A stretch of DNA of 60,739 nt, the filler included, from Platydemus manokwari (taxonomy: Eukaryota), in assembly GCA_037951405.1 (NCBI GenBank). It is 5 parts of 5 records of this genome, joined end to end, with 100 filler letters (N's around TTAATTAATTAA, not from the genome) between each part and the next. Parts side by side here need not be neighbours in the genome. Positions count along the whole stretch, not along the records: positions 1 to 18,775 come from JBBMOY010233338.1; 4 more parts are not named here. One strand, 5' to 3'. The notes under the pieces are model-generated. The model did not search any database. It saw only the letters and a program-made list of their open reading frames with translations, and was not told the origin of the DNA. Positions 4,472 through 16,950 of the stretch are shown in pieces (the first letter of the stretch is position 1; each line of letters begins with the position of its first letter). The translations under genes and the position numbers were made by a program.

Positions 4472-7339
4472 TATCAGTGAAGTTTACTAGTATTCGATAA
4501 CAAATGCAATTTAAGGAACGTCAGAAATATTTCATTGTGTAATTTTGCTTCTATTTTATTTTTAATTTCAAGAAAATCATCATCTTAAGCGAAGGATACA
4601 CCAAAACCATTCAAAAACCTCTAATATCGATTAGCAATGAAAACAAATTTATTTTCAAATGTTTATTTTTTATGAGTGCGCCCGAGACGAAAAATAATAT
4701 GTAAATCAAAGATAAGTAGTGATGTTTGTCTCTTTAACAACTTATAACGAAAATTAAGGGAGTTCCACTCAGTGTAAATTGAGATATACAGATCGATAAA
4801 CTTCTTTCTTCATTTTATTTATTGATTTGCAGTTATTAGACACACTAGTTTGTCAACAAAACCATCTAAAAAATTAAATGAAAGCAAAATTAATTAAAAT
4901 TATTTCAATTAATAATTCGGTTTTTAAACATTTGGTCTTTAAAAGTATACTACTGATAAATATCTAGTAGGTAATGTGGCGCTTTTGCTAATCATAAATG
5001 ATTGTATATGATTGATAATTACAGGAGTCGCTTAACTAAATTTATTGATTTGAATCTGTTGTAAATACAATTTTAATTCAATAAAAAATTTTATAAAAAA
5101 TTTATCTTGTTCGTAAAGGTAAAAAATACAAGGGTTAATAATACAAGAATCAATATATTTACTTTTCGAGAACTCACATTATCGAAGTCCGATAACAACT
5201 TTCTATGATATCAAATCTAAAATAAATACGAATGAAGTAGTATATATCTAAATATGTTGTACTAGGTCACATAAAATTTCATTCGAATCCTCAATCTTGC
5301 AGCTCAAAAATTGTTGTCGTCCCAATTTCTTAATAAATTTACATTGCCCATCATGATCTAAATAATAATGATTATGATTTTAATGTTATACTTTAGAATT
5401 CCGGTAATGTAGGCGCATCAATCCATATATTAGTTTTTTATATAATTAAAACCTAAACATTAATTGATTTACAAAAGCGATAAATACCAGATTTTAATAA
5501 AAAAAACTAATGATTATTTGATTGTCGATAAATATGATCAATAAATGATCAATAAAATTAAATTTCAATCTAAACCCCAAATACCTTTTCTGGTACAAAA
5601 TATTCATCAGCAATCTTAAATAAATAATTAATCCAGGTCACGTAACACAATTTAACTTCATAACTAAATAAAATCACTACTCATCATAAGAAACAGCTAT
5701 TAAAATATTGATCTCAATTCTTGAAATTTTAAAATAAAACTAAAAAAATAAAATCATAATCAAAAAGTAAAAATTCATAGTGTTTAAAAGTAACAAAAAA
5801 AATGACATAAAAATCACATTCTAGTAACCCCACAACATTATAAAATTCAGGAATTCTCATAATTTTATATATTTTAACTTATCTAAATTTATTTTTATAC
5901 TATTGATTTGAATTGAATCAACTGTATGTCTGGAGCTAGGTTTACGGCTTTAATCGATAATTAAACTTTTATTTATTCTTAATGTCTGCATCTTCATGAA
6001 CTAAATGTGACACACAACGTTTTGAATATGAAGCTTCATTATATATTTGAAAAACAACAAATTCAAATCATTAATCAAAACTGAATTACATAAAATCAAT
6101 AATTGACATTTCATCTCAATATTTATTTTTATATCAAATCGATATTATGTCAGACAAGATAACAATCACATCGGAATAAATCGAAATCTGTCATAAATCA
6201 ATGAGTAATGAAGATTCATATCCGTATCTAAGTAGGACTTCATGGATAAGTACTGATCCCGATTACTTACCAGTTACGAGAAATGATATTGTTCTGCAAT
6301 GAATTAGGTCTTAGTTTTCAAGAATATTTTGCGTATTTCGAGAAATAATTGTGCGAAAAATATAGACTATGAGGACTTATAACAAGGCTCTTATCTATTT
6401 AAAATAGACCTAGCAACAGATTTGTCTTGAAAATATATATCAGAAAGAGAAGAAAAACAGTAACACAGCTTATTTTGCATGTATGTAAGAATCACAAAAA
6501 GACAGAACCAGACACCTAGCTTACATTAATTTAAATTCTGATATTGTGCAAAATATTCTGGTTGTACAGCAAGAAGTTTAAGATAATAGTTTAGAATTTA
6601 CAAATCTTAACGAAAATCTGTTCCATGTTGGAAGTTAAAAAATGTTCTCTCACATAGAAGATAATTTCAATTGTATATTTAGCATTTAAAAGGGTATTAA
6701 ACTAATAAGTTTTCCACAATAAAAAGAAGAATCAACAATTCGCAAATGAAATAAGTTTATTGTCTGCGAGACTGGTTTTTTCCAAACATAAATGCAATAT
6801 ATAAATCAGCAACGATATAATAATTATCTGTCCAATAAAAATAATCAGATAAATATCAATTGCAGATAAATCAATTGCAGAAGCTGAGTAACGAATTTCA
6901 CTAATAAAGGCTTGCAAATTTAAAATTTCAAATCTTCACAACCTCTTTCTTGAAAATCTTTGATTTTCTATTTATCGATAATTATCTCTGCATCGAATAA
7001 ATCTAAACAGAAATTTCTTTTTTTCTTTCTTCACATTTGTTATACATCGTCCACCTTCTCTACTATAAATTCATGACATACATCTTCTCAGAATCGAATA
7101 CAAATACTTGCTCGTCATGTATGTGGCCAATCGATAAAGCACGTATTGAACAGGAATTGCAAACCCAGGACCCAGAATTATATTTTATTGATAATTATTT
7201 AAAAAAATTGACATCTTTTGATGACAATTTATAAAATTTTTTTAATTTAAACTTTCAAATTTTCACATTGAGCATTGACCTCTATGTATTTTCCATTTGT
7301 TTACGTTATCATAAACGCCAATATTATTTTCGCCATTGT

Positions 7340-8863
7340 CTTTACTGCACTTATTTCCTTGATCCTGTAATTTTGAAGAGAGGTGACTGTCAATATGAAG
7401 AAATTAACTCTGACGAAGCCGATAAATGCCATCAAAGCGATCCAAGAAAGACCTTTCAGAAGGAGACCACATTCAAAAACTCAATTCCAATCGTGCAGGA
7501 AAAAGAATTTGGTGTGAAGAAATATCATCGTGCTGCACTTAATCACGTGGAGTTTTCAAACACTACGAGACCAACAAAATAAATGAAGGCTATTGCTTCT
7601 GAAATCCTACATTGCATGGTAATTATTTAAAACCAGCAGATTGTTTTTGCTATGATGAGCTTAGACATCAGAAGTTTGAATGTCCATTGCAGGACATCCA
7701 TTCAGAAAATGCCATTTAGCCAGAAAGTGTAGTTACAATAGTTCGAAGAAAATACTATGCATCAATGACGAAGAAGACGAAGCCGATATTCAAACCTCAA
7801 ATGAAGTAAGTGATTGTGTTAGCTCACTTTCCATGAAAGAAAATAAACTGGAATCAACCTCCCGGGGAACCTATTGAGCAAATCTCCAGAAGACAGGTAA
7901 CAAATTTAGTAACCAAAATTTAAGAATTGATAGAAAATCTTCTCGAAACCAATGTAATAACGCCTTGCAAAAGCTTTTGGAACTCACTTTGGTCGTGGTT
8001 CTAAAGAAAGATGGATCGATTAGGATGTGTTAAGATTTCGGAAAATTAAACGACAATCAGAAGTTTTCTTTTCTGGTACCTGATATCCAGACGTTATTGG
8101 ACTCAGTGTATATAGTGACAGTTTTCTCTACGATAGATTTAAGTCAAACATATTATCACGTCGAAAATGAGGAAGATTCTAAGTTGAAACGACATTAAAC
8201 ACTAGAACTGGGCAGTTCTGTTTTAACATACTACCTTTTGTATTGTGTACTGCACCGCTACATTTCAGAGTCTAATAAATTAGATATTCAAAGGTTTGGT
8301 TTGCAAGGATGTTTTTGTTTATATAAACGATATTTAAGTGTATGGAAGAACAGTAGGGGAATACAACGAAAAACTCGAAAAAAGTGCAGAAGGTATAGAA
8401 AAAAATAATGACAAATTCAAGCAATTAAGCGCGGATAGCATGACTCAGTTGAGGTCGTTCTTAGGATTATGCAATTATTACAGACGGTTTATCGAAAACT
8501 GCGCATAATTACGACTTCGTTATATGGAATGATGATTGGAAGCGAAGAAAATTGAATGGACTATAGAGTATGAAAAAATTTTGGAAATCTAAAGGAAAAA
8601 TTGTGCAAATCGTCAATTTAAGCCTTCCTGGATACAACAAAGATATTATTTAAAATACTGACTTAATTTTCAAAGCAATTGGCGGGGTTTGAAGCCATTT
8701 AGATCACAGTGGAAAAGAGAGAGTAGGAACCTATGGTTCTAGAACTCATAACAGTCATGAAAAAGGTTATCGTGTCACGAGGAAAGAGCTTTTGGCAATT
8801 CACGAGTACACTATGGATTTTAGGAATTTTCTTTTTGGAAAGAAATTTGTGAGCCGCACTGAT
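7340..8863 (+). mobile_element. Decayed Ty3/Gypsy LTR retrotransposon (gag/pro remnant, RT, RNase H)
   Basis: Frameshifted motifs in the expected order: LVVVLKKDGSIRMC*DFGKLN (~7990-8050), FSTIDLSQTYYHV (~8120-8160), FNILPFVLCTAP, VYINDI (decayed YxDD, ~8320), RSFLGLCNYYRRFI (~8450-8490), TRKELLAI and FRNFLFGKKFV.RTD (~8777-8863). Left boundary approximate. Confidence 0.88.
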
Positions 8864-8869
8864 TTTGAT

Positions 8870-10040
8870 GATTTTATTACAATTTTATATTTTTTAAATC
8901 AATTTGTTTGATGTATATTAAAATAGAATTGATGACATTTATATTTATATTTAATAATAATATAATTTAATAATAATAGTATATTCAATGATAATCTATT
9001 CGCAACTTCTTAAAATAAACTCATCACCATTGGGTATTGAGGCATCTTTATTTTTAGATTATCATTTAATATAGAAATATTGATATCGTTCCAAATGTTG
9101 CCATAGCGAGATGATATAAATTCATACCTCCAGATGATCTCGATAATATTGTTGAAGAATTGTAATGAAAATGAATCTATTATATTCTTGTCTGATATGT
9201 GCATTTTGTGATCAGTGTTGTCTACGGAGTCGAGATTGGCCGTGGATCATTGGATATATTGAAACATTATTGGATTTTGAAGATATGATGATGCCATCGA
9301 ATATCAGAATGTTAGATGCTGAACAGAATATTACACTTCAGCCCAAATCATTTGCAGACTCTCGCAACAGATGTCTGGGAGAAACTTATTTACAAATCAA
9401 TCCATGCATGTTTCCTCCAGCATTGATCTTCACAAAGAAATGCTTCGATTATAATAATTGTAAAAATCAATACACACAGTTCAATTACACATATACGATC
9501 ATAGAAGATTCTCAGAAGAAATATTTGACTCGAAAACGTGGTTCCAAAAGATTGCTCAAAAAATGTGTCCGAAAATAACCTATTTAATCAAATCTCGATT
9601 TTCCGTTATTTCTTGAGAAACATATGATTTATTTTATTGATTATTTTTATCGACAATAAAACAATCGTTAATTTATCATTTATTATGAATATCTGGTGTG
9701 TTGAAATCAATGTTTATTTATATATAAATATCATATTTTATAATTATTTAACTTTATTTAATAAATTTGTTTTGATCTATTAAAAATCATTCATAATGCT
9801 GACAAAATAAATGGCAAAATATTTCAATAGGTTACAACAATTCTTATATATAAAATGATTGTTGAATGAATTTAATCAATACGTATTGGCTAAATAGACA
9901 AACCAATCAGCGTTTCCTATTCTCTACCAATCATAGCAACTTCTTGCAATTGTTTACAACTTATCAAAATAATCTGAATTCTATTGGTTGTTATAAATTC
10001 GATTTTTTCTATGTTTAGAAACATTGACATTATTCTCTGA
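8870..10040 (+). repeat. Arm A of an inverted segmental duplication (partner ~12810-14050)
   Basis: Reverse-complement similarity covers the 5' flank, the CDS and the 3' flank (e.g. CTATTGGTTGTTA at ~9981 vs TAACAACCAATAG at ~12869); boundaries approximate. Confidence 0.8.
9165..9578 (+). CDS. 137-aa Cys-rich, possibly secreted orphan protein, paralog A
   Basis: Intact ATG..TAA ORF. Its paralog at 13319-13732 has the same length and all Cys conserved. All 5 differences in the first 41 codons are synonymous, with many more silent changes downstream. Confidence 0.85.
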   Translation: MKMNLLYSCLICAFCDQCCLRSRDWPWIIGYIETLLDFEDMMMPSNIRMLDAEQNITLQPKSFADSRNRCLGETYLQINPCMFPPALIFTKKCFDYNNCKNQYTQFNYTYTIIEDSQKKYLTRKRGSKRLLKKCVRK

Positions 10041-10829
10041 TATAAAGTAATATAAAGGAATTATGACATCTTATGCCAAGTGGCTGATCACAAACCAACC
10101 CAGTTTATTATTAAAATGCTTATTGCTATTAACCAATACACCAATTGTTACGGAACAACAATGAAATAAAAATGCTATAAATCACTGCTATCATACGTAT
10201 GTGATTTTAAATATACTTTTATACCCTTAGACAAAATTTCCTCAATGCGCAGTTCATGATAGCAGATCTTGAATTATCTAGTCCTTCGTGCTATTAGTTA
10301 TGTGCCTCTCTCAAGAGTTTTTACCCACCTTGGCTCGATAATTAGGAAGAATATACGATATAAATATAATTTAACACGAATATATCTTACGTGATCCTCT
10401 GGGTTTTCATCAGCAATAAGAATAATTCTTTTTTATACTTATATAGGGCATATATTTAATGGCAACTTCGGAGAAATTGGCTTTGACTTTGGCTGCAAAA
10501 ATTGGTTTTCAACAATCACGCCCAACGCAATTTACCAGTGGTTTCAGGTCAAAGAAAAATGATGTTTTACTGCCCTATATATGGCTACTGGGTCATGGGG
10601 GAAATAATGCATTCGAATAAAATATGCGGACTTAAATTCCCCTTTATTTTGATGACTTTTCTCAAATTCGATATTTTTCCGAAGATAATTAAACTTTTTT
10701 TATTTATTTTAATTGGTTGTGTTATTAAATTAACCTCTAAATTATCATAAATTGGTGTGTAACTATTTTATTTAATGGTAACAAGACTTTATTATCAAAA
10801 TCTAAAATGGATTTACCTTGATCATCATG

Positions 10830-10884
<55 letters not shown>
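10830..10884. repeat. (ATT)n microsatellite
   Basis: About 18 tandem ATT units. Confidence 0.95.
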
Positions 10885-10885
<1 letters not shown>

Positions 10886-12809
10886 CATCATTAATTTATT
10901 TATAAAATAAAATCCTAATTGAAAATAATAATAAATCTAGGTGCCTGTAACGTTGGAAAATGTAGAAATCTTTAAAGTTATTCACGAAGTACTTGTTTTA
11001 TCTGGATATAAATCATCATTACCCACTGATTTGTGATTGATTTATAAAATATTTAGACTTTGATTGTCATTTCATTTGATATTTATGAAGATGTTTATAT
11101 CTTGTTAATGAATAAATATTGATATTATAGAATTATTGATTTTTTGATATATATATATATCTGATTTGATTACATGTTATTGATGATTTAATTTTATTGT
11201 TTTTCATAATTTATTGATTTATTGATTTTATAATATTTTGATTTATTGATAAACTAATAATCATTGATATTTCAGTCAATAAATTATTGAAATATTTTAT
11301 TTCACTCTCATTTTGGAGATATGCTTCATCACATATGCAAAGAATTCTGTTTGGGTTATCAATATAATACCATATAAAATACCATTCTTTAAATGACTGA
11401 CCTTCTTGACCACATATCATACATACATACAGAACCATCTCTTGGCCTCTAAAATTCAACTTGTTGTGTCAGTGTCTCCAAAATATTTATTAAACTTAAT
11501 GCCTATTTTTACAGATTGTTATTGTCTGTCTAAATTCTAATATATTCATTAAGTTCGAGGTATTTATTGGTGCCGATCCATATTTTCTTTTACACACCTT
11601 GTAGTTTTTTGGACATTTCCTGCTTATCTTTGCTGCGTTATGTGTATTTATAGATACTATTCATAGAATATTCAAGCTAATATCGAAGATAATATCTAAC
11701 TGATATCATTAACGGTTAAGTCAGATTTTTGTAATTCTGGATGAAAAGGCTTAAAGTGCCATTTAATCGAATCTATGGACTTCCTTCGTCTCGTAACACA
11801 ACATTGGTTTGATGACTTTGCGATTGACGTTTAAAATTATTAATTATAATCGGCATCACTGTTGTCATCAATTAATGCAATTTCATTGAAACTAGGGTAA
11901 AAAACTTTAATAATAAAGGAAAAATCTTTCGCTACAATCATGGAAATGGAATGGATCATTACCAAAGATATTTGGCCCTTTACTATTAATATAAATTGAT
12001 ACTGATCAAGAAAATGATATAAAAACTATTAAAATAACTTAAGCTAAACTTCAGATTGTGTTATTAAGTTGGGGTCAAAGATTGAATTCATCGGGGTTTA
12101 TATAGTGTTCCTGAGCTATGATAACTGGTGTCGCAATAATCCTTTAGCTTATTCTAATTTGGATTGCTTTACTAACATAATAATACGGTGATTTTAATTC
12201 TGCCACTTTTCAATAGGCGTGCTTACTGATATTATTTGATACTTTTTGGCAGAATCCAATGTTGCAGTTTTGATTAAATACAAAAAATAAGAAATAAAAC
12301 TGATCGAATTGGAGCCACATCAGAAGGACACACAAATCTAATAAATGAACTCATATGGCTGTGAATAAAGTTAATAATTCGAGTAAAGATAAATTTTCTT
12401 ACTATCATATCGAGCTGAATCAAACTTCCAAAAAATGATTTTCACCAACTTATATTGAGATTAGATATTGATTTGTAATTAAAAAAAATGGAGCAGCTGA
12501 GAAAGAAGTTTTGTTGTTTGAATCCTATTGTGAGTTATTATTAAATCTCATCACTTATTTAACTGATAGATCACGAGAACATATTGTAAATCCTTTTCAT
12601 TATAAATTCTGAGCACTAATCAAGGATCATTTCATATTCCCTACATCATATTGGCAATATCCTACTATTTAAAAATCCTCGGATTGTTTCCTGTACAACC
12701 TAGATTTTTTTAAATCCACCTCTGGAGTCACTTATTATTTTACAATAATAATTGAAGAAGAAATGTTAAAGATAAATGCCGGACGAATGAATTTCTGTTC
12801 ATAAAACCA

Positions 12810-14050
12810 TGAACAGTGAGATTGAAATATTATCGGTGTTTCTAAAATAGAATTTCATTCGGAAAATGTAACAACCAATAGAATTCAGTTTATTAATGGA
12901 ATTAGTGAAACGATTGATAGACTGTGCTATTATTGATATCAAAGTGAAAATGCTTTTGAATATTTTTTGAAAATTTTGTTGAAATTCATTCTAAAATCAT
13001 TTCCTATGTCAGAATTGTTTTAATCTATCAAAATTATTTTCCAATTTATTTTATAAGCACCGTGTATGATATTTAATATATTAAAACAAATTTATCAAAT
13101 ATTCATCATTAAATAAAGTTTAATAATAATAAAAAATGCCATTTATTATTATTTAATGAATTCATATTTTATTTATTGAAACTATTTTCACTTTTAAATA
13201 ATTTAAAATCAATTAATTAAGTAATTAATTATTGTTTCATTATCCATAAAAATAATCAATAAAATAAATCATGTTTCTCCCCGATAAATAACAGAAAATC
13301 GATATTTAAATAAATAATTTATTTTCGAACACACTTTTTGAGCAATCGCTTGGAAACGTGTTTTCGAGACAAATATTTTTTATTCGAATTTGTGACAATT
13401 GTTAATGTGTAATTAAATTGTGTGTAATGATTTTTACAATTGTTGTAATCGAAGCATTTCTTTGTGAAGATCACTGCTGGAGGAAACATACATGGATTGA
13501 CTTGTAAATAGGTTTCTCCCAGACATTGATTGTGCTTGTCTAGATGTGGTTTCGGCTGAAGTATAATATTCTGTACAGTATCTAGCTTTCTGATCTTCGA
13601 TTTCATTGACATATCTTCAAAATCCAATAATGTTTCAATATATCCAATGATCCACGGCCAATCACGACTCCGAAGACAACACTGATCACAGAATGCACAT
13701 ATCAGACAGGAATATAAAAGATTCATTTTCATTCTAATTCTTCAACAATATTATCGAGATCATCTGGAGGTATGAATTTATATCATCTCGCTATGGCAAC
13801 ATTTGGAATGATATCAATATTTCTATAATAAATGATAATCTAAAAATAAAGATGCCTCAATATCCAATGGTGATGAGTTTATTTTAAGAAATTGCGCAAA
13901 GTGATCATAATTCATGATTATTAAATATACTATTATAATTATGAAATTATATTATTAGTTTTATTAGTTCATGTAAATATGAATGCCTATACCAACTTTT
14001 TTTTATTATAAATCAAACATTGATTAAAAAAATCTAAAATTCTCAAAATA
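12810..14050 (-). repeat. Arm B of the inverted segmental duplication (partner ~8870-10040)
   Basis: Reverse-complement match to arm A, including a ~96% identical leader. Confidence 0.8.
13319..13732 (-). CDS. 137-aa Cys-rich, possibly secreted orphan protein, paralog B
   Basis: Intact ORF; the first 41 aa are identical to paralog A despite silent nucleotide changes. Confidence 0.85.
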   Translation of the reverse strand: MKMNLLYSCLICAFCDQCCLRSRDWPWIIGYIETLLDFEDMSMKSKIRKLDTVQNIILQPKPHLDKHNQCLGETYLQVNPCMFPPAVIFTKKCFDYNNCKNHYTQFNYTLTIVTNSNKKYLSRKHVSKRLLKKCVRK

Positions 14051-14428
14051 TTAGTTATTCACATAAATCAAATCTATAATGCTTAATAGCTGTAACTAAG
14101 TGAGTAGGCATTTCAGTGCTCAACATCATAAAATAATTATATCTCAAAAACAATATTTTTCATTTCGTATTTTATTTTTATTTATATTTGTACTTTTTAT
14201 TTATTTATATTTTCATTTATATTAGTAAGTAATATCGATTATAATTGATTATATTATTATTATTTATAATGGAAATTCAAGATATTATCTCATTAATGTT
14301 ATTTATTTAACATTGTTGGCATTTACAATTTTGCTCATCTAGCGGGATTTATTGCCTCTGCGCTATTTTAGGCATTGCTATTTCGATTAAAACAAATATA
14401 TTAAAATTATAATAATATTAAAATAATA

Positions 14429-14775
14429 ATATCTATTTCAATATCAATATCAATCTCTATATTAATTCAATATCAGTTCTAACATCAATGCCAATGTCAA
14501 TATCAACATCAATACCTACTCCAATACCAATAGTAATACCAATATCTATTTCAATATTAATATCAATGCCAATATCAATATCAATCTCTATATCAATTCA
14601 ATATCAGTTCTAACATCAATGTCAATGTCAATATCAACATCAATATCTACTCCAATACCAATAGCAATACCAATATCTATTTCAATATTAATATCAATAC
14701 CAATATCAATACCATTGTCAATATCAATCTCTATATCAATTCAATATCAGTTCCAACATCAATGTTAATATCAAT
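14429..14775. repeat. Minisatellite: ~131-bp higher-order unit (~2.6 copies) built from AATATC-like hexamers
   Basis: AATATCTATTTCAATAT starts at ~14428, 14541 and 14672; the internal AATTCAATATCAGTTC.AACATCAATG occurs three times. Confidence 0.9.
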
Positions 14776-15349
14776 CGAAAAACTTGACAAATCATTGGTA
14801 ATTTTATTAAAAACTTTGTATTTCTTTTAATTATTAAAGTCGTCAACAATGTGCACAAATATCTTTCAATGAATTTTATAAATTATCGATTTGGAAGTAG
14901 ATCTAGTAAAAGGTTATCAATTTGATTCTCGATAACAACTTGATTCTATTTCAGAAATTGACTTCCTCATCACAAACCAAGATGATAACTTGATAAATCT
15001 TAATGATAACTAAATATCATCAAATCTTCATATTAGCCAGATTTAAATGAAATTTATTTTTTAATGTCACTGATAAACACTCTAACTGATGACGACTGGG
15101 AGTTGAATGCTCAGATCACAATGCGATGAACTGACATCAAAAACAACACGGCATTAGTTGCTTTCTGTTAGGTTATGTCCCACAGTTATGATTGCAATAT
15201 TCGCCTAGGTTTTATTAAATATAGGCTTGGCTATCCGAAACGATTCCTGCAATTTAATGTGGACATTCTTTAGGATGAGTAACGTGATTAAATAAAGAAA
15301 GACATTGTATTTGTTTAAATAATTAGAAAGTTTGCCAAAATTTCCATAT

Positions 15350-16950
15350 TCAAAAATTTGATGTTAGAATTTCAAATGAGGCTGCAAAATGGATGCAAGA
15401 TGCAGAGGAGTGTCTATTAATTAATAGTCTCAGCCTGATTAGAGCATTCGATTTATTACTTTCAGACCAGGCAGACATTTTGTGAAAAAACTTCGAATCG
15501 AAAGATACCATAGAAGACTTGGCTAAACCGTGGTTTGAAGATACATTTACATTCAAAAACTCTATGATGGATATGATTGTCGACCTTGCAAATGTTCAAC
15601 AGTAGGAGAGCAAACGGTTTGCCACCTTCAAGATAAGAGTTCACAGATTGGTTGACGCCGTGATGAATTTCGGATTGAAACAAGACTCCATAGTGAAAGA
15701 TATCATTAGCAAGAGAACGTGATAAGATAGATTGAAAGACGCTCTTTCCCTGAAACCAGACATGGATATAACAGAAGTTAGGAGTGCTGCAAAGGTGTTT
15801 GAAAATCGAGAACAAAGCTTACAACGAGATTCTCAGGCAGTCAATACAATTCCTAGAGACAGCTATGTTCAAGCCCTGAAAACTGGAAGAAGCAACCGGT
15901 GGAATAACAGGTTCAAGAAAGCAACGAGTAAAGTAATTATAAACAACTCCATACTATCAGAACACAAAACCCCGAGTCGATAGCTTCAGAACAGAAGACC
16001 ACTTCAGGTAGAAAGACCAGTGTATTCAATGTGATTCATGTCAAAAACAATCATAATAAGTGTCGAGGTATGCCAGGCTTAAAAGAATAACGCTGGCGTG
16101 GAGATAATTGCATCTGCTGTGGAGAAAGCGGCACTACAGAAGTACATAAGCCAGTGCCTCCTAAAGCACAAATATTTAATATGCGAACAAGAAGACCGTC
16201 ATTTAAGACCATGCCACGAGGTATCAGACTTAGAGTAAAAAGTAGAATTTTATGTATTCAAAACTTGATCGAGAAGCGATTTTCTCCAATCGAAGACCCA
16301 GTGATGCATCATGTAGAAAATTAAAAAAACCACAACAACTCTGTCGCATACATTTCGTCGGTGGGGTTGAATCAGTAGATAACAGGAAAAATCTAAATGG
16401 AAAAAGACATGAAGAGATGTTTAAGTAAAGTGTTGATCAACGGAGCTGAAGCATAGATATTATGGGATTCGTTGGCGTCTTTTTCAGTGATTAGCGAGAA
16501 CTATTGAAAGCAAGTGGGAAGTCCAAAATTACAGGATAGTTTGATTACACTTAGTGAGTTTTTTCAACGGATGCCGAATGCCATCTATGTTATTCAGGTG
16601 TGATCACCGAGTGGAAAGAAAAGAAAAGAAAAATAAAGGGTTAGGTGATGACACGATGAATGCATTCGTGATCCAGCTGAAAGAGATGGCCACAATAAAT
16701 TCATCACAATATATATATGACGAAAGATAGAAAGACGCAATGAAAACGATTAAAACTGTGAACACGGGCATAATTGGGAGACTCATCAATGAATACGGAA
16801 AAAATATCCATGGCTTCAAAATTGGATCTAGTTATTTACGATATTGTAATTACCGGAAATCTTTTTTCGCAGAATCTCAGAAGACAGCCCATGTACTTAG
16901 AAGCAAAAATTGAAGATGTGATAGAACGAAATAACTGAGCGTAATGATTA
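15350..16950 (+). mobile_element. Decayed Ty3/Gypsy gag-protease region
   Basis: Gag-like fragment at 15732-15983; zinc-knuckle remnant CICCGESG (~16110-16135); aspartyl protease remnant V.INGAEA*ILWDS.ASFSVISE (~16430-16500); pre-RT motif RRQPMYLEAKIE (~16880) similar to ~7888 in the other relic; many stops. Confidence 0.7.

What the first reader, a model, noticed from the sequence alone, without database searches (positions are those of the whole stretch)
9165..13732. Inverted pair of orphan 137-aa Cys-rich genes under purifying selection; possible degenerate IL-17-like cystine-knot ligands
Seen: two convergent intronless ORFs of identical length with all Cys conserved. The first 41 codons differ at 5 sites, all silent (CTA/CTT, TCT/TCC, TTT/TTC, CTA/CTT, CGA/CGT), and at least 15 more silent codon differences follow. 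Amino-acid changes cluster in aa ~42-70 and ~110-126. This strongly supports a real protein family. Established: IL-17 and related cystine-knot cytokines have the layout C-x-x-x-Y...DPxRxP..I..AxC..xxC followed by two beta strands and a terminal CxC. Inference: 'NRCLGETYLQINPCMFPPALIFTKKCFDYNNC..YTQFNYTYTII...RLLKKCVRK' follows that layout but lacks one terminal Cys, behind a weak signal-like N-terminus. It could be an undescribed lineage-specific secreted signalling family.
Basis: partly seen in the sequence, partly recalled or inferred. Interest (0 to 1): 0.7.

Follow-up and report, generated by a model that had tools for sequence, protein, structure and literature searches.

The report
Planarian ston-family genes, IL-17-like fold
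Two tail-to-tail genes encode small secreted cysteine-rich proteins related to the planarian wound- and bacteria-induced gene ston, and a structure prediction puts their C-terminal half closest to the cytokine IL-17, which gives a testable idea of what this flatworm-only family does.

Summary
ORFs 9165-9578(+) and 13319-13732(-) are convergent, each 137 aa, 82% identical, with every Cys kept and dN/dS 0.26 (P about 1e-5 against neutrality).

They are not orphans. The same 911-Mb AT-rich genome holds about 10 intact paralogs (17-58% identity) plus edge-cut copies and pseudogenes. All have a hydrophobic signal-like N-terminus and a shared cysteine framework. A profile search of 1.84 billion proteins found only nine true relatives. 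One is Ston of Schmidtea mediterranea, and homology is confirmed (hhalign 96%, E 1e-9, signal peptide removed). Published work describes ston as a planarian-specific epidermal gene induced by injury and by heat-killed E. coli.

An AlphaFold model of the window protein (pLDDT 81, pTM 0.73) has IL-17A/F/25 as top match in four structure searches. The best fits are Z 5.0-5.9 and rmsd 2.1-3 A over about 70 of residues 62-137. By endpoint arithmetic, C93 and C134 fall on a bonded IL-17 knot pair.

Against IL-17: no sequence method detects it, the terminal CxC is missing, Z is modest, and a Ston model did not reproduce the match.

Verdict: a real, lineage-restricted secreted family. The IL-17-like fold is plausible (about 55%). 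Descent from IL-17 is unproven.

The parts
9165..9578 (+). Gene A: intronless CDS, 137 aa, stop included. A ston-family secreted Cys-rich protein.
13319..13732 (-). Gene B: inverted paralog of gene A, 137 aa, 82% aa identity.
9165..9212 (+). Signal-peptide-like N-terminus of A (aa 1-16, hydrophobic core LLYSCLICAFC). The B equivalent is 13685-13732(-). The cleavage site is inferred from the family alignment, just before the conserved C-x3-(S/D)W motif.
   Evidence: No SignalP was available.
9348..9575 (+). aa 62-137 of A: four beta strands (72-78, 86-93, 99-115, 120-136) that superpose on the IL-17 core. Holds C70, C81, C93, C99 and C134. The B equivalent is 13322-13549(-).
8996..9164 (+). Conserved upstream block of A, 95% identical to B. 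It holds TATAAAT at 9115-9121, 50 nt before the ATG. Blocks of it, including the TATA motif, are also kept upstream of the more distant paralogs L003 and L006. Likely promoter and short 5'UTR.
13733..13901 (-). Conserved upstream block of B, the mirror of 8996-9164. TATA equivalent at 13776-13782.
9579..9950 (+). 3' flank of A, homologous to 12976-13318(-) at about 75% identity. AATAAA lies at 9656-9661. The same flank accompanies other family copies in the genome.
12976..13318 (-). 3' flank of B, part of the inverted duplication.
8693..8908 (+). Remnant of an LTR-retrotransposon RNase H domain just outside the duplicated unit. It is a neighbour, not part of the gene.
   Evidence: PF17917, E 5e-11

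Best explanation
The two ORFs are a recently duplicated, tail-to-tail pair of functional genes. They belong to a planarian-restricted family whose one named member is ston of Schmidtea mediterranea.

Each encodes a precursor of about 137 aa. It has a cleavable signal peptide followed by a basic mature protein of about 120 aa (pI about 9). The mature protein is held by three disulfides on a conserved framework: C-x3-(S/D)W-P-x-I ... Q-x-I-x-L ... C-x3-Y-x3-I-(N/D)-P-C-x-(D/F)-P-P-x-x-I-x4-C-x(1-5)-C ... C.

An N-terminal helix is followed by four long beta strands. In the AlphaFold model these strands take the shape of the IL-17 cystine-knot core. C93-C134 would stand in for one IL-17 knot disulfide. 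The second knot disulfide is replaced by a family-specific pairing that involves C70, C81 or C99.

By analogy with ston, I infer that these proteins are secreted from epithelium as extracellular cytokine-like or defence ligands, and that the family has expanded and diversified quickly.

Shown: gene reality, purifying selection, family membership, homology to Ston, and the fold resemblance of one model.

Inferred: secretion, disulfide pairing, descent from IL-17, inducibility and signalling function of these two particular genes.
For: Structure of the locus and selection:
- ORFs and inverted duplication.
- dN/dS 0.26, P 1.4e-5. dN/dS is 0.23-0.47 in all ten paralog pairs that could be scored.
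- A TATA-containing upstream block is conserved even in paralogs with dS about 0.8-0.9.

Family:
- About 10 intact paralogs plus fragments in the same genome.
- Hydrophobic N-termini are present in 18 of 20 members, and 16 of 20 carry an even count (6 or 4) of Cys after the conserved N-terminal motif.
- The HMM search of 1.84 billion proteins gave nine true relatives, including Ston AFJ24718.1.
- hhalign of mature parts, family against Ston plus its ortholog in this genome: probability 96.4%, E 1.1e-9.
- Tree: the Ston clade and the L011/P0003 clade each pair a gene of this genome with a protein from elsewhere, while the window pair lies in a clade made up only of this genome's own copies.

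Biology of ston:
- An epidermal gene induced by injury and by heat-killed E. coli (bioRxiv 10.64898/2026.05.17.725704).
- Listed among wound-response genes (PMC10560571).

Fold:
- AF2 model: pLDDT 80.7, pTM 0.73.
- Foldseek: IL-17F top, probability 0.99, E 0.04.
- VIA wide search of 48,161 chains: ranks 1-3 are IL-17A, an unnamed Fab-antigen complex (6wio_C, which one search lists among IL-17A chains with the same residue range) and IL-25 (Z 5.2, 4.9, 4.4). PTTH, myostatin, Noggin, NGF and SOST follow.
- VIA second look: all top 50 are IL-17 family, Z 4.5-5.9, rmsd 2.1-3.0 A over 66-76 residues in most rows. Model 62-137 aligns to IL-17A 63-147.
- Atlas: top row is the IL17 cluster, TM 0.46.
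- Invertebrate IL-17s that lack one knot disulfide are documented (PMC11087794).
Against: - No sequence method links the family to IL-17.
- Z of 5-6 lies in the range that the tool's own notes call common for unrelated arrangements.
- The terminal C-x-C of IL-17 is absent from the window genes.
- The Ston model (pLDDT 77, but only about 60 in the C-terminal hairpin) matched only generic alpha+beta rolls and no IL-17.
The Cys mapping rests on alignment end points.
- There is no expression evidence for these two genes.
- SEFIR and canonical IL17 domain hits in this assembly lie only on contigs of 233-715 bp with atypical GC (0.38-0.58 for the five hits that pass or nearly pass the Pfam cut-off, against 0.27 for the planarian loci), so they may be contaminants.
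Confidence: 0.6

Rival explanations
1. The family is secreted but is not a cytokine. It is a compact alpha+beta roll (helix packed on a curved antiparallel sheet, cystatin/NTF2-like topology beta-alpha-beta4). It would act as a direct defence effector, for example a cationic antimicrobial protein or an inhibitor or binder of microbial factors, released by wounded epidermis. On this reading the IL-17 resemblance is just two long hairpins lying side by side.
For: - The Ston model matches only generic alpha+beta folds: RIO-kinase N-lobe, NTF2/ketosteroid isomerase and a designed cystatin fold, Z 3.3-4.3.
- The same hits appear lower in the list for the window model over residues 21-95.
- pTM 0.73 suggests the helix and sheet form one packed domain.
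- Mature proteins are basic, pI 8.2-9.6 for most members, with a very cationic C-terminal tail.
- Ston is induced by bacterial particles.
Against: - Real cystatins and NTF2 proteins do not score above Z about 3.5.
- Pfam finds no cystatin or other family.
- For the better model, IL-17 chains outrank every alpha+beta roll in all four searches and fit at 2.1-3 A.
Confidence: 0.25
2. The apparent purifying selection is an artefact of recent gene conversion between the inverted copies. The ORFs would then be non-functional, or passengers of repetitive DNA, since they lie beside retrotransposon remnants and have many fragmentary copies.
For: - A tract of about 290 bp (8996-9287) is only 4-5% diverged, against 19-25% elsewhere.
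- An RNase H remnant lies 250 bp upstream.
- There are many partial copies and copies with stops.
- A paralogous locus keeps the retroelement and the 3' flank but lacks the gene.
Against: - Outside the tract, dN/dS is still 0.33, and 0.09 in the core aa 70-109.
- Distant paralogs (23-35% identity) keep an open frame, signal peptide and cysteines, with dN/dS 0.23-0.47.
- The ORF has no transposon domain.
- The retroelement lies outside the duplicated unit.
- A homolog in another species is a regulated host gene.
- Many of the 'fragments' sit at contig ends of a very fragmented assembly.
Confidence: 0.05
3. The family belongs to another cystine-knot ligand class (PTTH/Trunk, Noggin, neurotrophin/Spaetzle, TGF-beta/DAN) rather than being IL-17-like.
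For: These families occupy ranks 4-15 of the wide structural search, Z 3.0-4.0. PDGF/VEGF appear in Foldseek at low probability. IL-17 and neurotrophins are proposed to share an origin (PMC11087794).
Against: - All score below IL-17 and align fewer residues at higher rmsd.
- The second look gave IL-17 chains only in the top 50.
- The motif P-x-x-I-x4-C before the first knot Cys is IL-17-like in register (not significant).
Confidence: 0.07

Closest known systems
Ston (Smed-ston, AFJ24718.1 / UniProt I1ZI64), a wound-induced epidermal gene of Schmidtea mediterranea
   Same: - Homologous: the family profile finds it (E 4.9e-4 in 1.84 billion proteins), and hhalign of mature parts gives 96.4%, E 1.1e-9.
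- Same length, signal peptide, N-terminal C-x(3-4)-SW motif, Q-x-(I/V)-x-L, C-x3-Y, I-N-P...P-P-x-x-(I/V)-x4-C and a C-terminal Cys.
- This genome has its own ston ortholog (L028, 40% identity).
   Different: - Only 17-19% identical to the window proteins.
- Ston lacks C81 and C99, has an extra Cys before the conserved Q, and ends in C-x-C.
- Its beta3-beta4 hairpin is shorter.
- The window pair lies in a separate clade made up only of this genome's own copies.
- Inducibility is known for ston only.
Interleukin-17 family (Pfam PF06083), especially invertebrate types with an incomplete knot (T1B/T1C of PMC11087794)
   Same: - Secreted ligands of similar size.
- Predicted four-strand core superposes at 2.1-3.0 A, Z up to 5.9.
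- Model residues 93 and 134 fall on IL-17A C94 and C144 by end-point arithmetic.
- A P-x-x-I-x4-C motif leads into the first knot Cys.
- One relative is induced in barrier epithelium by injury and by bacteria.
   Different: - No detectable sequence similarity.
- No terminal C-x-C.
- No (S/C)PW motif next to the core.
- Extra cysteines C19, C70 and C81, and an N-terminal helix.
- No receptor shown.
Other cystine-knot ligands (PTTH/Trunk, Noggin, NGF/Spaetzle, TGF-beta, sclerostin/DAN)
   Same: Elongated paired beta-hairpins tied by disulfides; they are secreted ligands; Z 3.0-4.0.
   Different: Lower scores than IL-17. Their six-Cys knot spacing (C-x-G-x-C ... C-x-C) is not present.

Membership tests
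ston family (planarian-specific secreted proteins) | Significant profile-level homology to Smed Ston outside the signal peptide | tested here: met
   hhalign probability 96.4%, E 1.1e-9, 73 columns. HMM hit E 4.9e-4.
ston family (planarian-specific secreted proteins) | Signal peptide followed by the conserved Cys framework and the SW, Q-x-I-x-L and PP-x-x-I motifs | tested here: met
   Alignments A3 and A4. Hydrophobicity and Cys counts.
ston family (planarian-specific secreted proteins) | Induction in epidermis by wounding or bacteria | not testable with these tools
The exact proteins are not on record. Known for Smed-ston only.
IL-17 (PF06083) | Match to the Pfam IL17 model above the gathering score | tested here: not met
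   0 of 20 family members match at E up to 10. The PDB profile search found no IL-17.
IL-17 (PF06083) | Four-strand elongated cystine-knot-cytokine core | tested here: inconclusive
   Window model: IL-17 is the top hit in four searches, Z 5.0-5.9, rmsd 2.1-3 A. Ston model: no IL-17 hit. These Z values are modest.
IL-17 (PF06083) | Two knot disulfides joining beta2 (C-x4-C) to beta4 (C-x-C) | tested here: not met
   Only one C-terminal Cys (C134) in the window genes and most paralogs. C93 and C134 are placed like IL-17A C94 and C144 by alignment end points (inference). Loss of one such bond is known in invertebrate IL-17s.
IL-17 (PF06083) | Profile-profile similarity to canonical IL-17 sequences | tested here: inconclusive
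   hhalign against three canonical-looking IL-17 fragments of this assembly: E 0.28, 12 columns. The register puts PP-x-x-I-x4-C on the motif before the first knot Cys. This is a thin profile. No full IL-17 alignment could be obtained.
IL-17 (PF06083) | Cognate SEFIR-domain receptor in the same genome | tested here: inconclusive
   SEFIR hits of 59 and 31 bits, but on 233-254 bp contigs with GC 0.44-0.58 against 0.27 for planarian loci.
Cystatin/NTF2-like alpha+beta roll | Fold match and family motifs | tested here: inconclusive
   Only weak generic hits, Z 2.6-4.3. No Pfam hit.
Transposon-encoded protein | Similarity to transposase, gag or pol, or position inside an element | tested here: not met
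   No Pfam domain in the ORF. The RNase H remnant lies outside the duplicated unit.

The most novel reading that the evidence does not exclude
The ston family is the planarian version of IL-17. These would be true, extremely diverged descendants of invertebrate IL-17 ligands with a rewired knot. Barrier epithelium would secrete them after injury or microbial contact, and they would signal through a SEFIR-type or replacement receptor. The family would have expanded by local inverted and segmental duplication into a fast-evolving cytokine repertoire. That would give planarian regeneration and immunity research its first candidate wound cytokine family with a known mode of action.
Probability: 0.3. 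Interest if true: 0.8.

Novelty: new variant of a known kind. Interest (0 to 1): 0.6.

Why it matters
ston is cited as a 'planarian-specific' injury- and bacteria-induced gene, and the papers I read give no known fold or mechanism for it.

If it is one member of a conserved, expanding family of secreted proteins with an IL-17-like core, that suggests a concrete hypothesis: an epithelial cytokine that links wounding, infection and regeneration. The hypothesis can be tested by RNAi of several paralogs together, by recombinant protein, and by receptor searches.

It would also add flatworms, which none of the three IL-17 evolution papers I checked covers, to the picture of how IL-17 knots lose and rewire disulfides.

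If the fold match is only a resemblance, the result is still useful. It annotates two genes and about ten paralogs, and it defines a family that Pfam lacks.

Tried and rejected
Searches that found nothing:
- Word-index protein search with the window protein: nothing.
- The same with a canonical IL-17 fragment, to build an IL-17 profile: nothing.
- The same with Ston: itself only.
- ESM-Atlas feature search, whole protein and mature part: no usable hit.
- Pfam on the two proteins and on all 20 family members: only scattered chance hits.
- PDB sequence and profile search: one chance hit, 4jrf.

False positives and name clashes:
- Hits P0008, P0010 and P0012 of the big search are false positives. 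P0008 and P0012 are bacterial repeat proteins with SpaA or PKD-type domains.
- 'ston-2' in the planarian literature is a different, neural gene.

Tools or papers not available:
- The Wenemoser 2012 paper, which I recall from memory as the original description of ston, is not held.
- The search of earlier findings was not open.
- Exact-protein look-ups for A and B found no record. Relatives P0003, P0004 and P0005 come from metagenome or Logan contigs without useful context.

Ideas rejected:
- A transposon-borne ORF.
- An antisense 64-78 aa ORF at 9010-9246, which looks like chance.

Other limits:
- Species identity was not determined. It is not S. mediterranea, because the best match to Ston is 40% identical.


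Full report
1. THE OBSERVATION

The ORF listing returns two ORFs of exactly 137 aa, at 9165-9578(+) and 13319-13732(-). They lie inside an inverted repeat whose best arm is 616 nt at 88% (8996-9611 against 13286-13901), with further arms on both sides. The proteins are 82% identical and all ten Cys are invariant.

My Nei-Gojobori count gives 25.7 synonymous and 33.3 non-synonymous differences. That is dS 0.42, dN 0.11 and dN/dS 0.26. The binomial probability of so many synonymous changes under neutrality is 1.4e-5.

By segment:
- Codons 1-41: 5 differences, all silent.
- aa 42-69: dN/dS about 1.05.
- aa 70-109: 0.09.
- aa 110-137: 0.21.

The other two frames are closed.

The 169 nt upstream of the ATG are only 4.7% diverged and codons 1-41 only 4.1%. 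The rest of the ORF is 19% diverged and the outer flanks 21-25%. Part of this is functional. TATAAAT at 9115-9121, 50 nt before the ATG, and several other blocks are also kept upstream of the paralogs L003 and L006, whose dS to the window genes is about 0.7-0.9. A gene-conversion tract of about 290 bp cannot be excluded, and it would explain why amino-acid changes begin abruptly at codon 42.

2. NOT ORPHANS: A MULTIGENE FAMILY

A six-frame search of the window's own genome (911 Mb in 1.99 million contigs, GC about 0.27) found 20 places. A second round with the family alignment gave the same set.

About ten copies are intact and full length, at 23-58% identity to gene A among this genome's paralogs and down to 17% in the ston-type copy. 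Several copies are cut by contig ends. At least five carry stops.

Almost every intact member begins with a hydrophobic stretch (maximum Kyte-Doolittle over 10 residues, 1.9-3.5). This is followed within a few residues by C-(I/L)-x-S-x-S-W-P-x-I. After that motif, 16 of the 20 members carry six or four Cys, an even number in either case. The window pair (an extra C18) and L012 carry seven, and the N-terminally truncated P0007 carries four in all. Most mature proteins are basic, pI 8.2-9.6.

dN/dS is 0.23-0.47 in all ten paralog pairs that could be scored.

The ORF has no Pfam domain. An LTR-retrotransposon RNase H remnant at 8693-8908 (PF17917, E 5e-11) lies outside the duplicated unit. A paralogous locus, contig C548219, keeps the retroelement piece and the 3' flank but lacks 8381-9597. 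That points to segmental duplication and loss, not to a transposon-borne ORF.

3. RELATIVES ELSEWHERE

The word-index search found nothing. An exhaustive HMM search of 1.84 billion representative proteins with alignment A3 gave 12 hits. Three are false positives, two of them bacterial proteins with SpaA or PKD-type repeats. Eight are unnamed proteins from metagenome or Logan contigs that share the full framework.

The last hit is Ston of Schmidtea mediterranea (AFJ24718.1, UniProt I1ZI64). With signal peptides removed, hhalign of the family against Ston plus its ortholog in this genome gives probability 96.4% and E 1.1e-9 over 73 columns.

The genome's own best match to Ston is 40% identical (L028). 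So the organism is a planarian, but not S. mediterranea.

A maximum-likelihood tree separates these groups:
- a Ston clade;
- an L011/P0003 clade;
- an L015/18/19/20 plus P0001/P0002 clade;
- a clade of this genome's own copies only, made of gene A, gene B and L003.

Two clades (Ston and L011/P0003) each pair a gene of this genome with a protein from elsewhere, which suggests that the subfamilies predate the split between species, while the window pair is a recent local expansion. The sources of the unnamed metagenome proteins are not known.

4. WHAT IS KNOWN OF STON

A 2026 preprint calls hadrian and ston epidermal, planarian-specific injury-induced genes. It shows both are also induced by heat-killed E. 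coli without wounding (bioRxiv 10.64898/2026.05.17.725704). PMC10560571 lists ston among wound-response genes altered by alx-3 RNAi. Neither paper mentions a fold or IL-17. 'ston-2' is an unrelated neural marker.

5. FOLD

AlphaFold2 on the nine-sequence alignment gave pLDDT 80.7 and pTM 0.73. The elements are strand 18-20, helix 25-38, strand 54-57, then strands 72-78, 86-93, 99-115 and 120-136.

Structure searches with this model:
- Foldseek against the PDB ranks IL-17F first (probability 0.99, E 0.04, TM 0.42-0.51). IL-17A/F/25 fill most of the list.
- VIA-align against 48,161 representative chains, which does not depend on Foldseek, ranks IL-17A first (Z 5.2), an unnamed Fab-antigen complex second (6wio_C, Z 4.9; one search lists the same chain among IL-17A chains with the same residue range) and IL-25 third (Z 4.4). 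PTTH, pro-myostatin, Noggin, NGF, sclerostin and other cystine-knot ligands follow.
- The second look gives IL-17 chains only in the top 50, Z 4.5-5.9, rmsd 2.1-3.0 A over 66-76 residues in most rows. Model 62-137 aligns to IL-17A 63-147 and to IL-17F 71-155.
- The ESM-Atlas shape search also puts an IL17 cluster first (TM 0.46).

From the alignment end points, model residues 93 and 134 fall on IL-17A residues 94 and 144. From memory, those two form one of the two knot disulfides. This mapping is an inference, because no residue-level alignment or coordinates were available.

Cys presence and absence co-vary across members:
- Ston-type members lack C81 and C99. They gain a Cys before Q54 and a terminal C-x-C.
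- L020 and P0009/P0013 lack C70 and one of C93/C99.

So the remaining bonds are family-specific, and I could not assign them.

PMC11087794 documents invertebrate IL-17 types that have lost one or another knot disulfide. An incomplete knot is therefore not disqualifying.

6. EVIDENCE AGAINST THE IL-17 READING

- No sequence method sees IL-17. This covers Pfam on 20 members, PDB profiles and Atlas features.
- hhalign against three canonical-looking IL-17 fragments from this assembly gives E 0.28. Its only aligned stretch does put PP-x-x-I-x4-C in the IL-17 register.
- The Z values are in the range the tool itself flags as common.
- An AlphaFold model of Ston (pLDDT 76.9, but about 60 in the last hairpin) matched no IL-17. 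It matched only generic alpha+beta rolls at Z 3.3-4.3.
- The overall order of elements (strand, helix, four or five antiparallel strands) is also that of cystatin/NTF2-like rolls. I keep this as the main rival.
- Canonical IL17 and SEFIR domain hits exist in the assembly. They sit only on contigs of 233-715 bp, with GC 0.38-0.58 for the five hits that pass or nearly pass the Pfam cut-off, so their origin is doubtful.

7. MECHANISM PROPOSED

Shown:
- two intact paralogs under purifying selection with a conserved TATA-containing upstream block;
- membership of the ston family;
- a signal-like N-terminus and an even cysteine framework across the family;
- an IL-17-like core in the best model.

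Inferred:
- The proteins are secreted, disulfide-stabilised extracellular ligands or defence factors of barrier epithelium, inducible by injury or microbes as ston is.
- The variable segment aa 42-69, where dN/dS is about 1, is a surface loop that is free to change.
- The extra C18 in A and B makes an odd Cys count that could serve an inter-chain bond.

My probabilities:
- real secreted gene family: about 0.9;
- IL-17-like core: about 0.55;
- true descent from IL-17: about 0.3.

8. LIMITS

No spliced model was needed, since the CDS is intronless.

Noticed in passing
window 7000-8908 (+), especially 8338-8505 and 8693-8908: Decayed LTR (gypsy-type) retrotransposon pol remnant. It has an RT-connection motif and an RNase H domain (PF17917, E 5e-11). 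It ends just before the duplicated gene unit.
   Followed up: partly
window 15726-16321 (+): GC-richer stretch with open frames that include a CCHC-like zinc-knuckle pattern (C-x2-C-x...H). It may be a gag remnant of another retroelement. Pfam gave no hit.
   Followed up: partly
window 14416-14820: Minisatellite with a 131-nt unit of about 2.7 copies, itself built from a 12-nt AATATCAATATC motif (about 29 copies). It lies just outside copy B.
   Followed up: no
window 10830-10893: (ATT)21 microsatellite in the spacer between the two genes.
   Followed up: no
L042 = G000:C548219:1-5391: Paralogous locus. It carries the 3' end of another family gene at its start. On the other strand it has the homolog of window 7523-8381 joined almost directly to the homolog of 9597-10043, so the gene and the RNase H piece are missing there. 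The tail-to-tail layout seems to recur.
   Followed up: partly
L034, L035, L036 (G000 contigs C1653798, C60835, C374767; 269-715 bp): Canonical-looking IL-17 domain fragments. They show C-P-W...N-R-x-P-x-x-I-x-E-A-x-C, and A-K-C-x-C-x-x-C ... G-C-x-C. They score 27.4, 24.1 and 22.4 bits for PF06083. GC is 0.38-0.48 against about 0.27 for planarian loci. They are either genuine canonical IL-17 genes of this worm or contamination.
   Followed up: partly
L047, L048 (G000 contigs C344733, C906202; 233-254 bp): SEFIR-domain fragments (59 and 31 bits) on tiny contigs with GC 0.58 and 0.44. The same doubt about origin applies.
   Followed up: no
window 9216-9221 and 13676-13681 (codons 18-19): A and B have a Cys-Cys doublet where the closest paralog L003 has Tyr-Cys. 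This gives an odd number of Cys in the mature protein and so a possible free or inter-chain cysteine.
   Followed up: no
L028:904-1305 (-): The ortholog of Smed-ston in this genome: 133 aa, 40% identical, ending in C-D-C. It is intact and intronless.
   Followed up: partly
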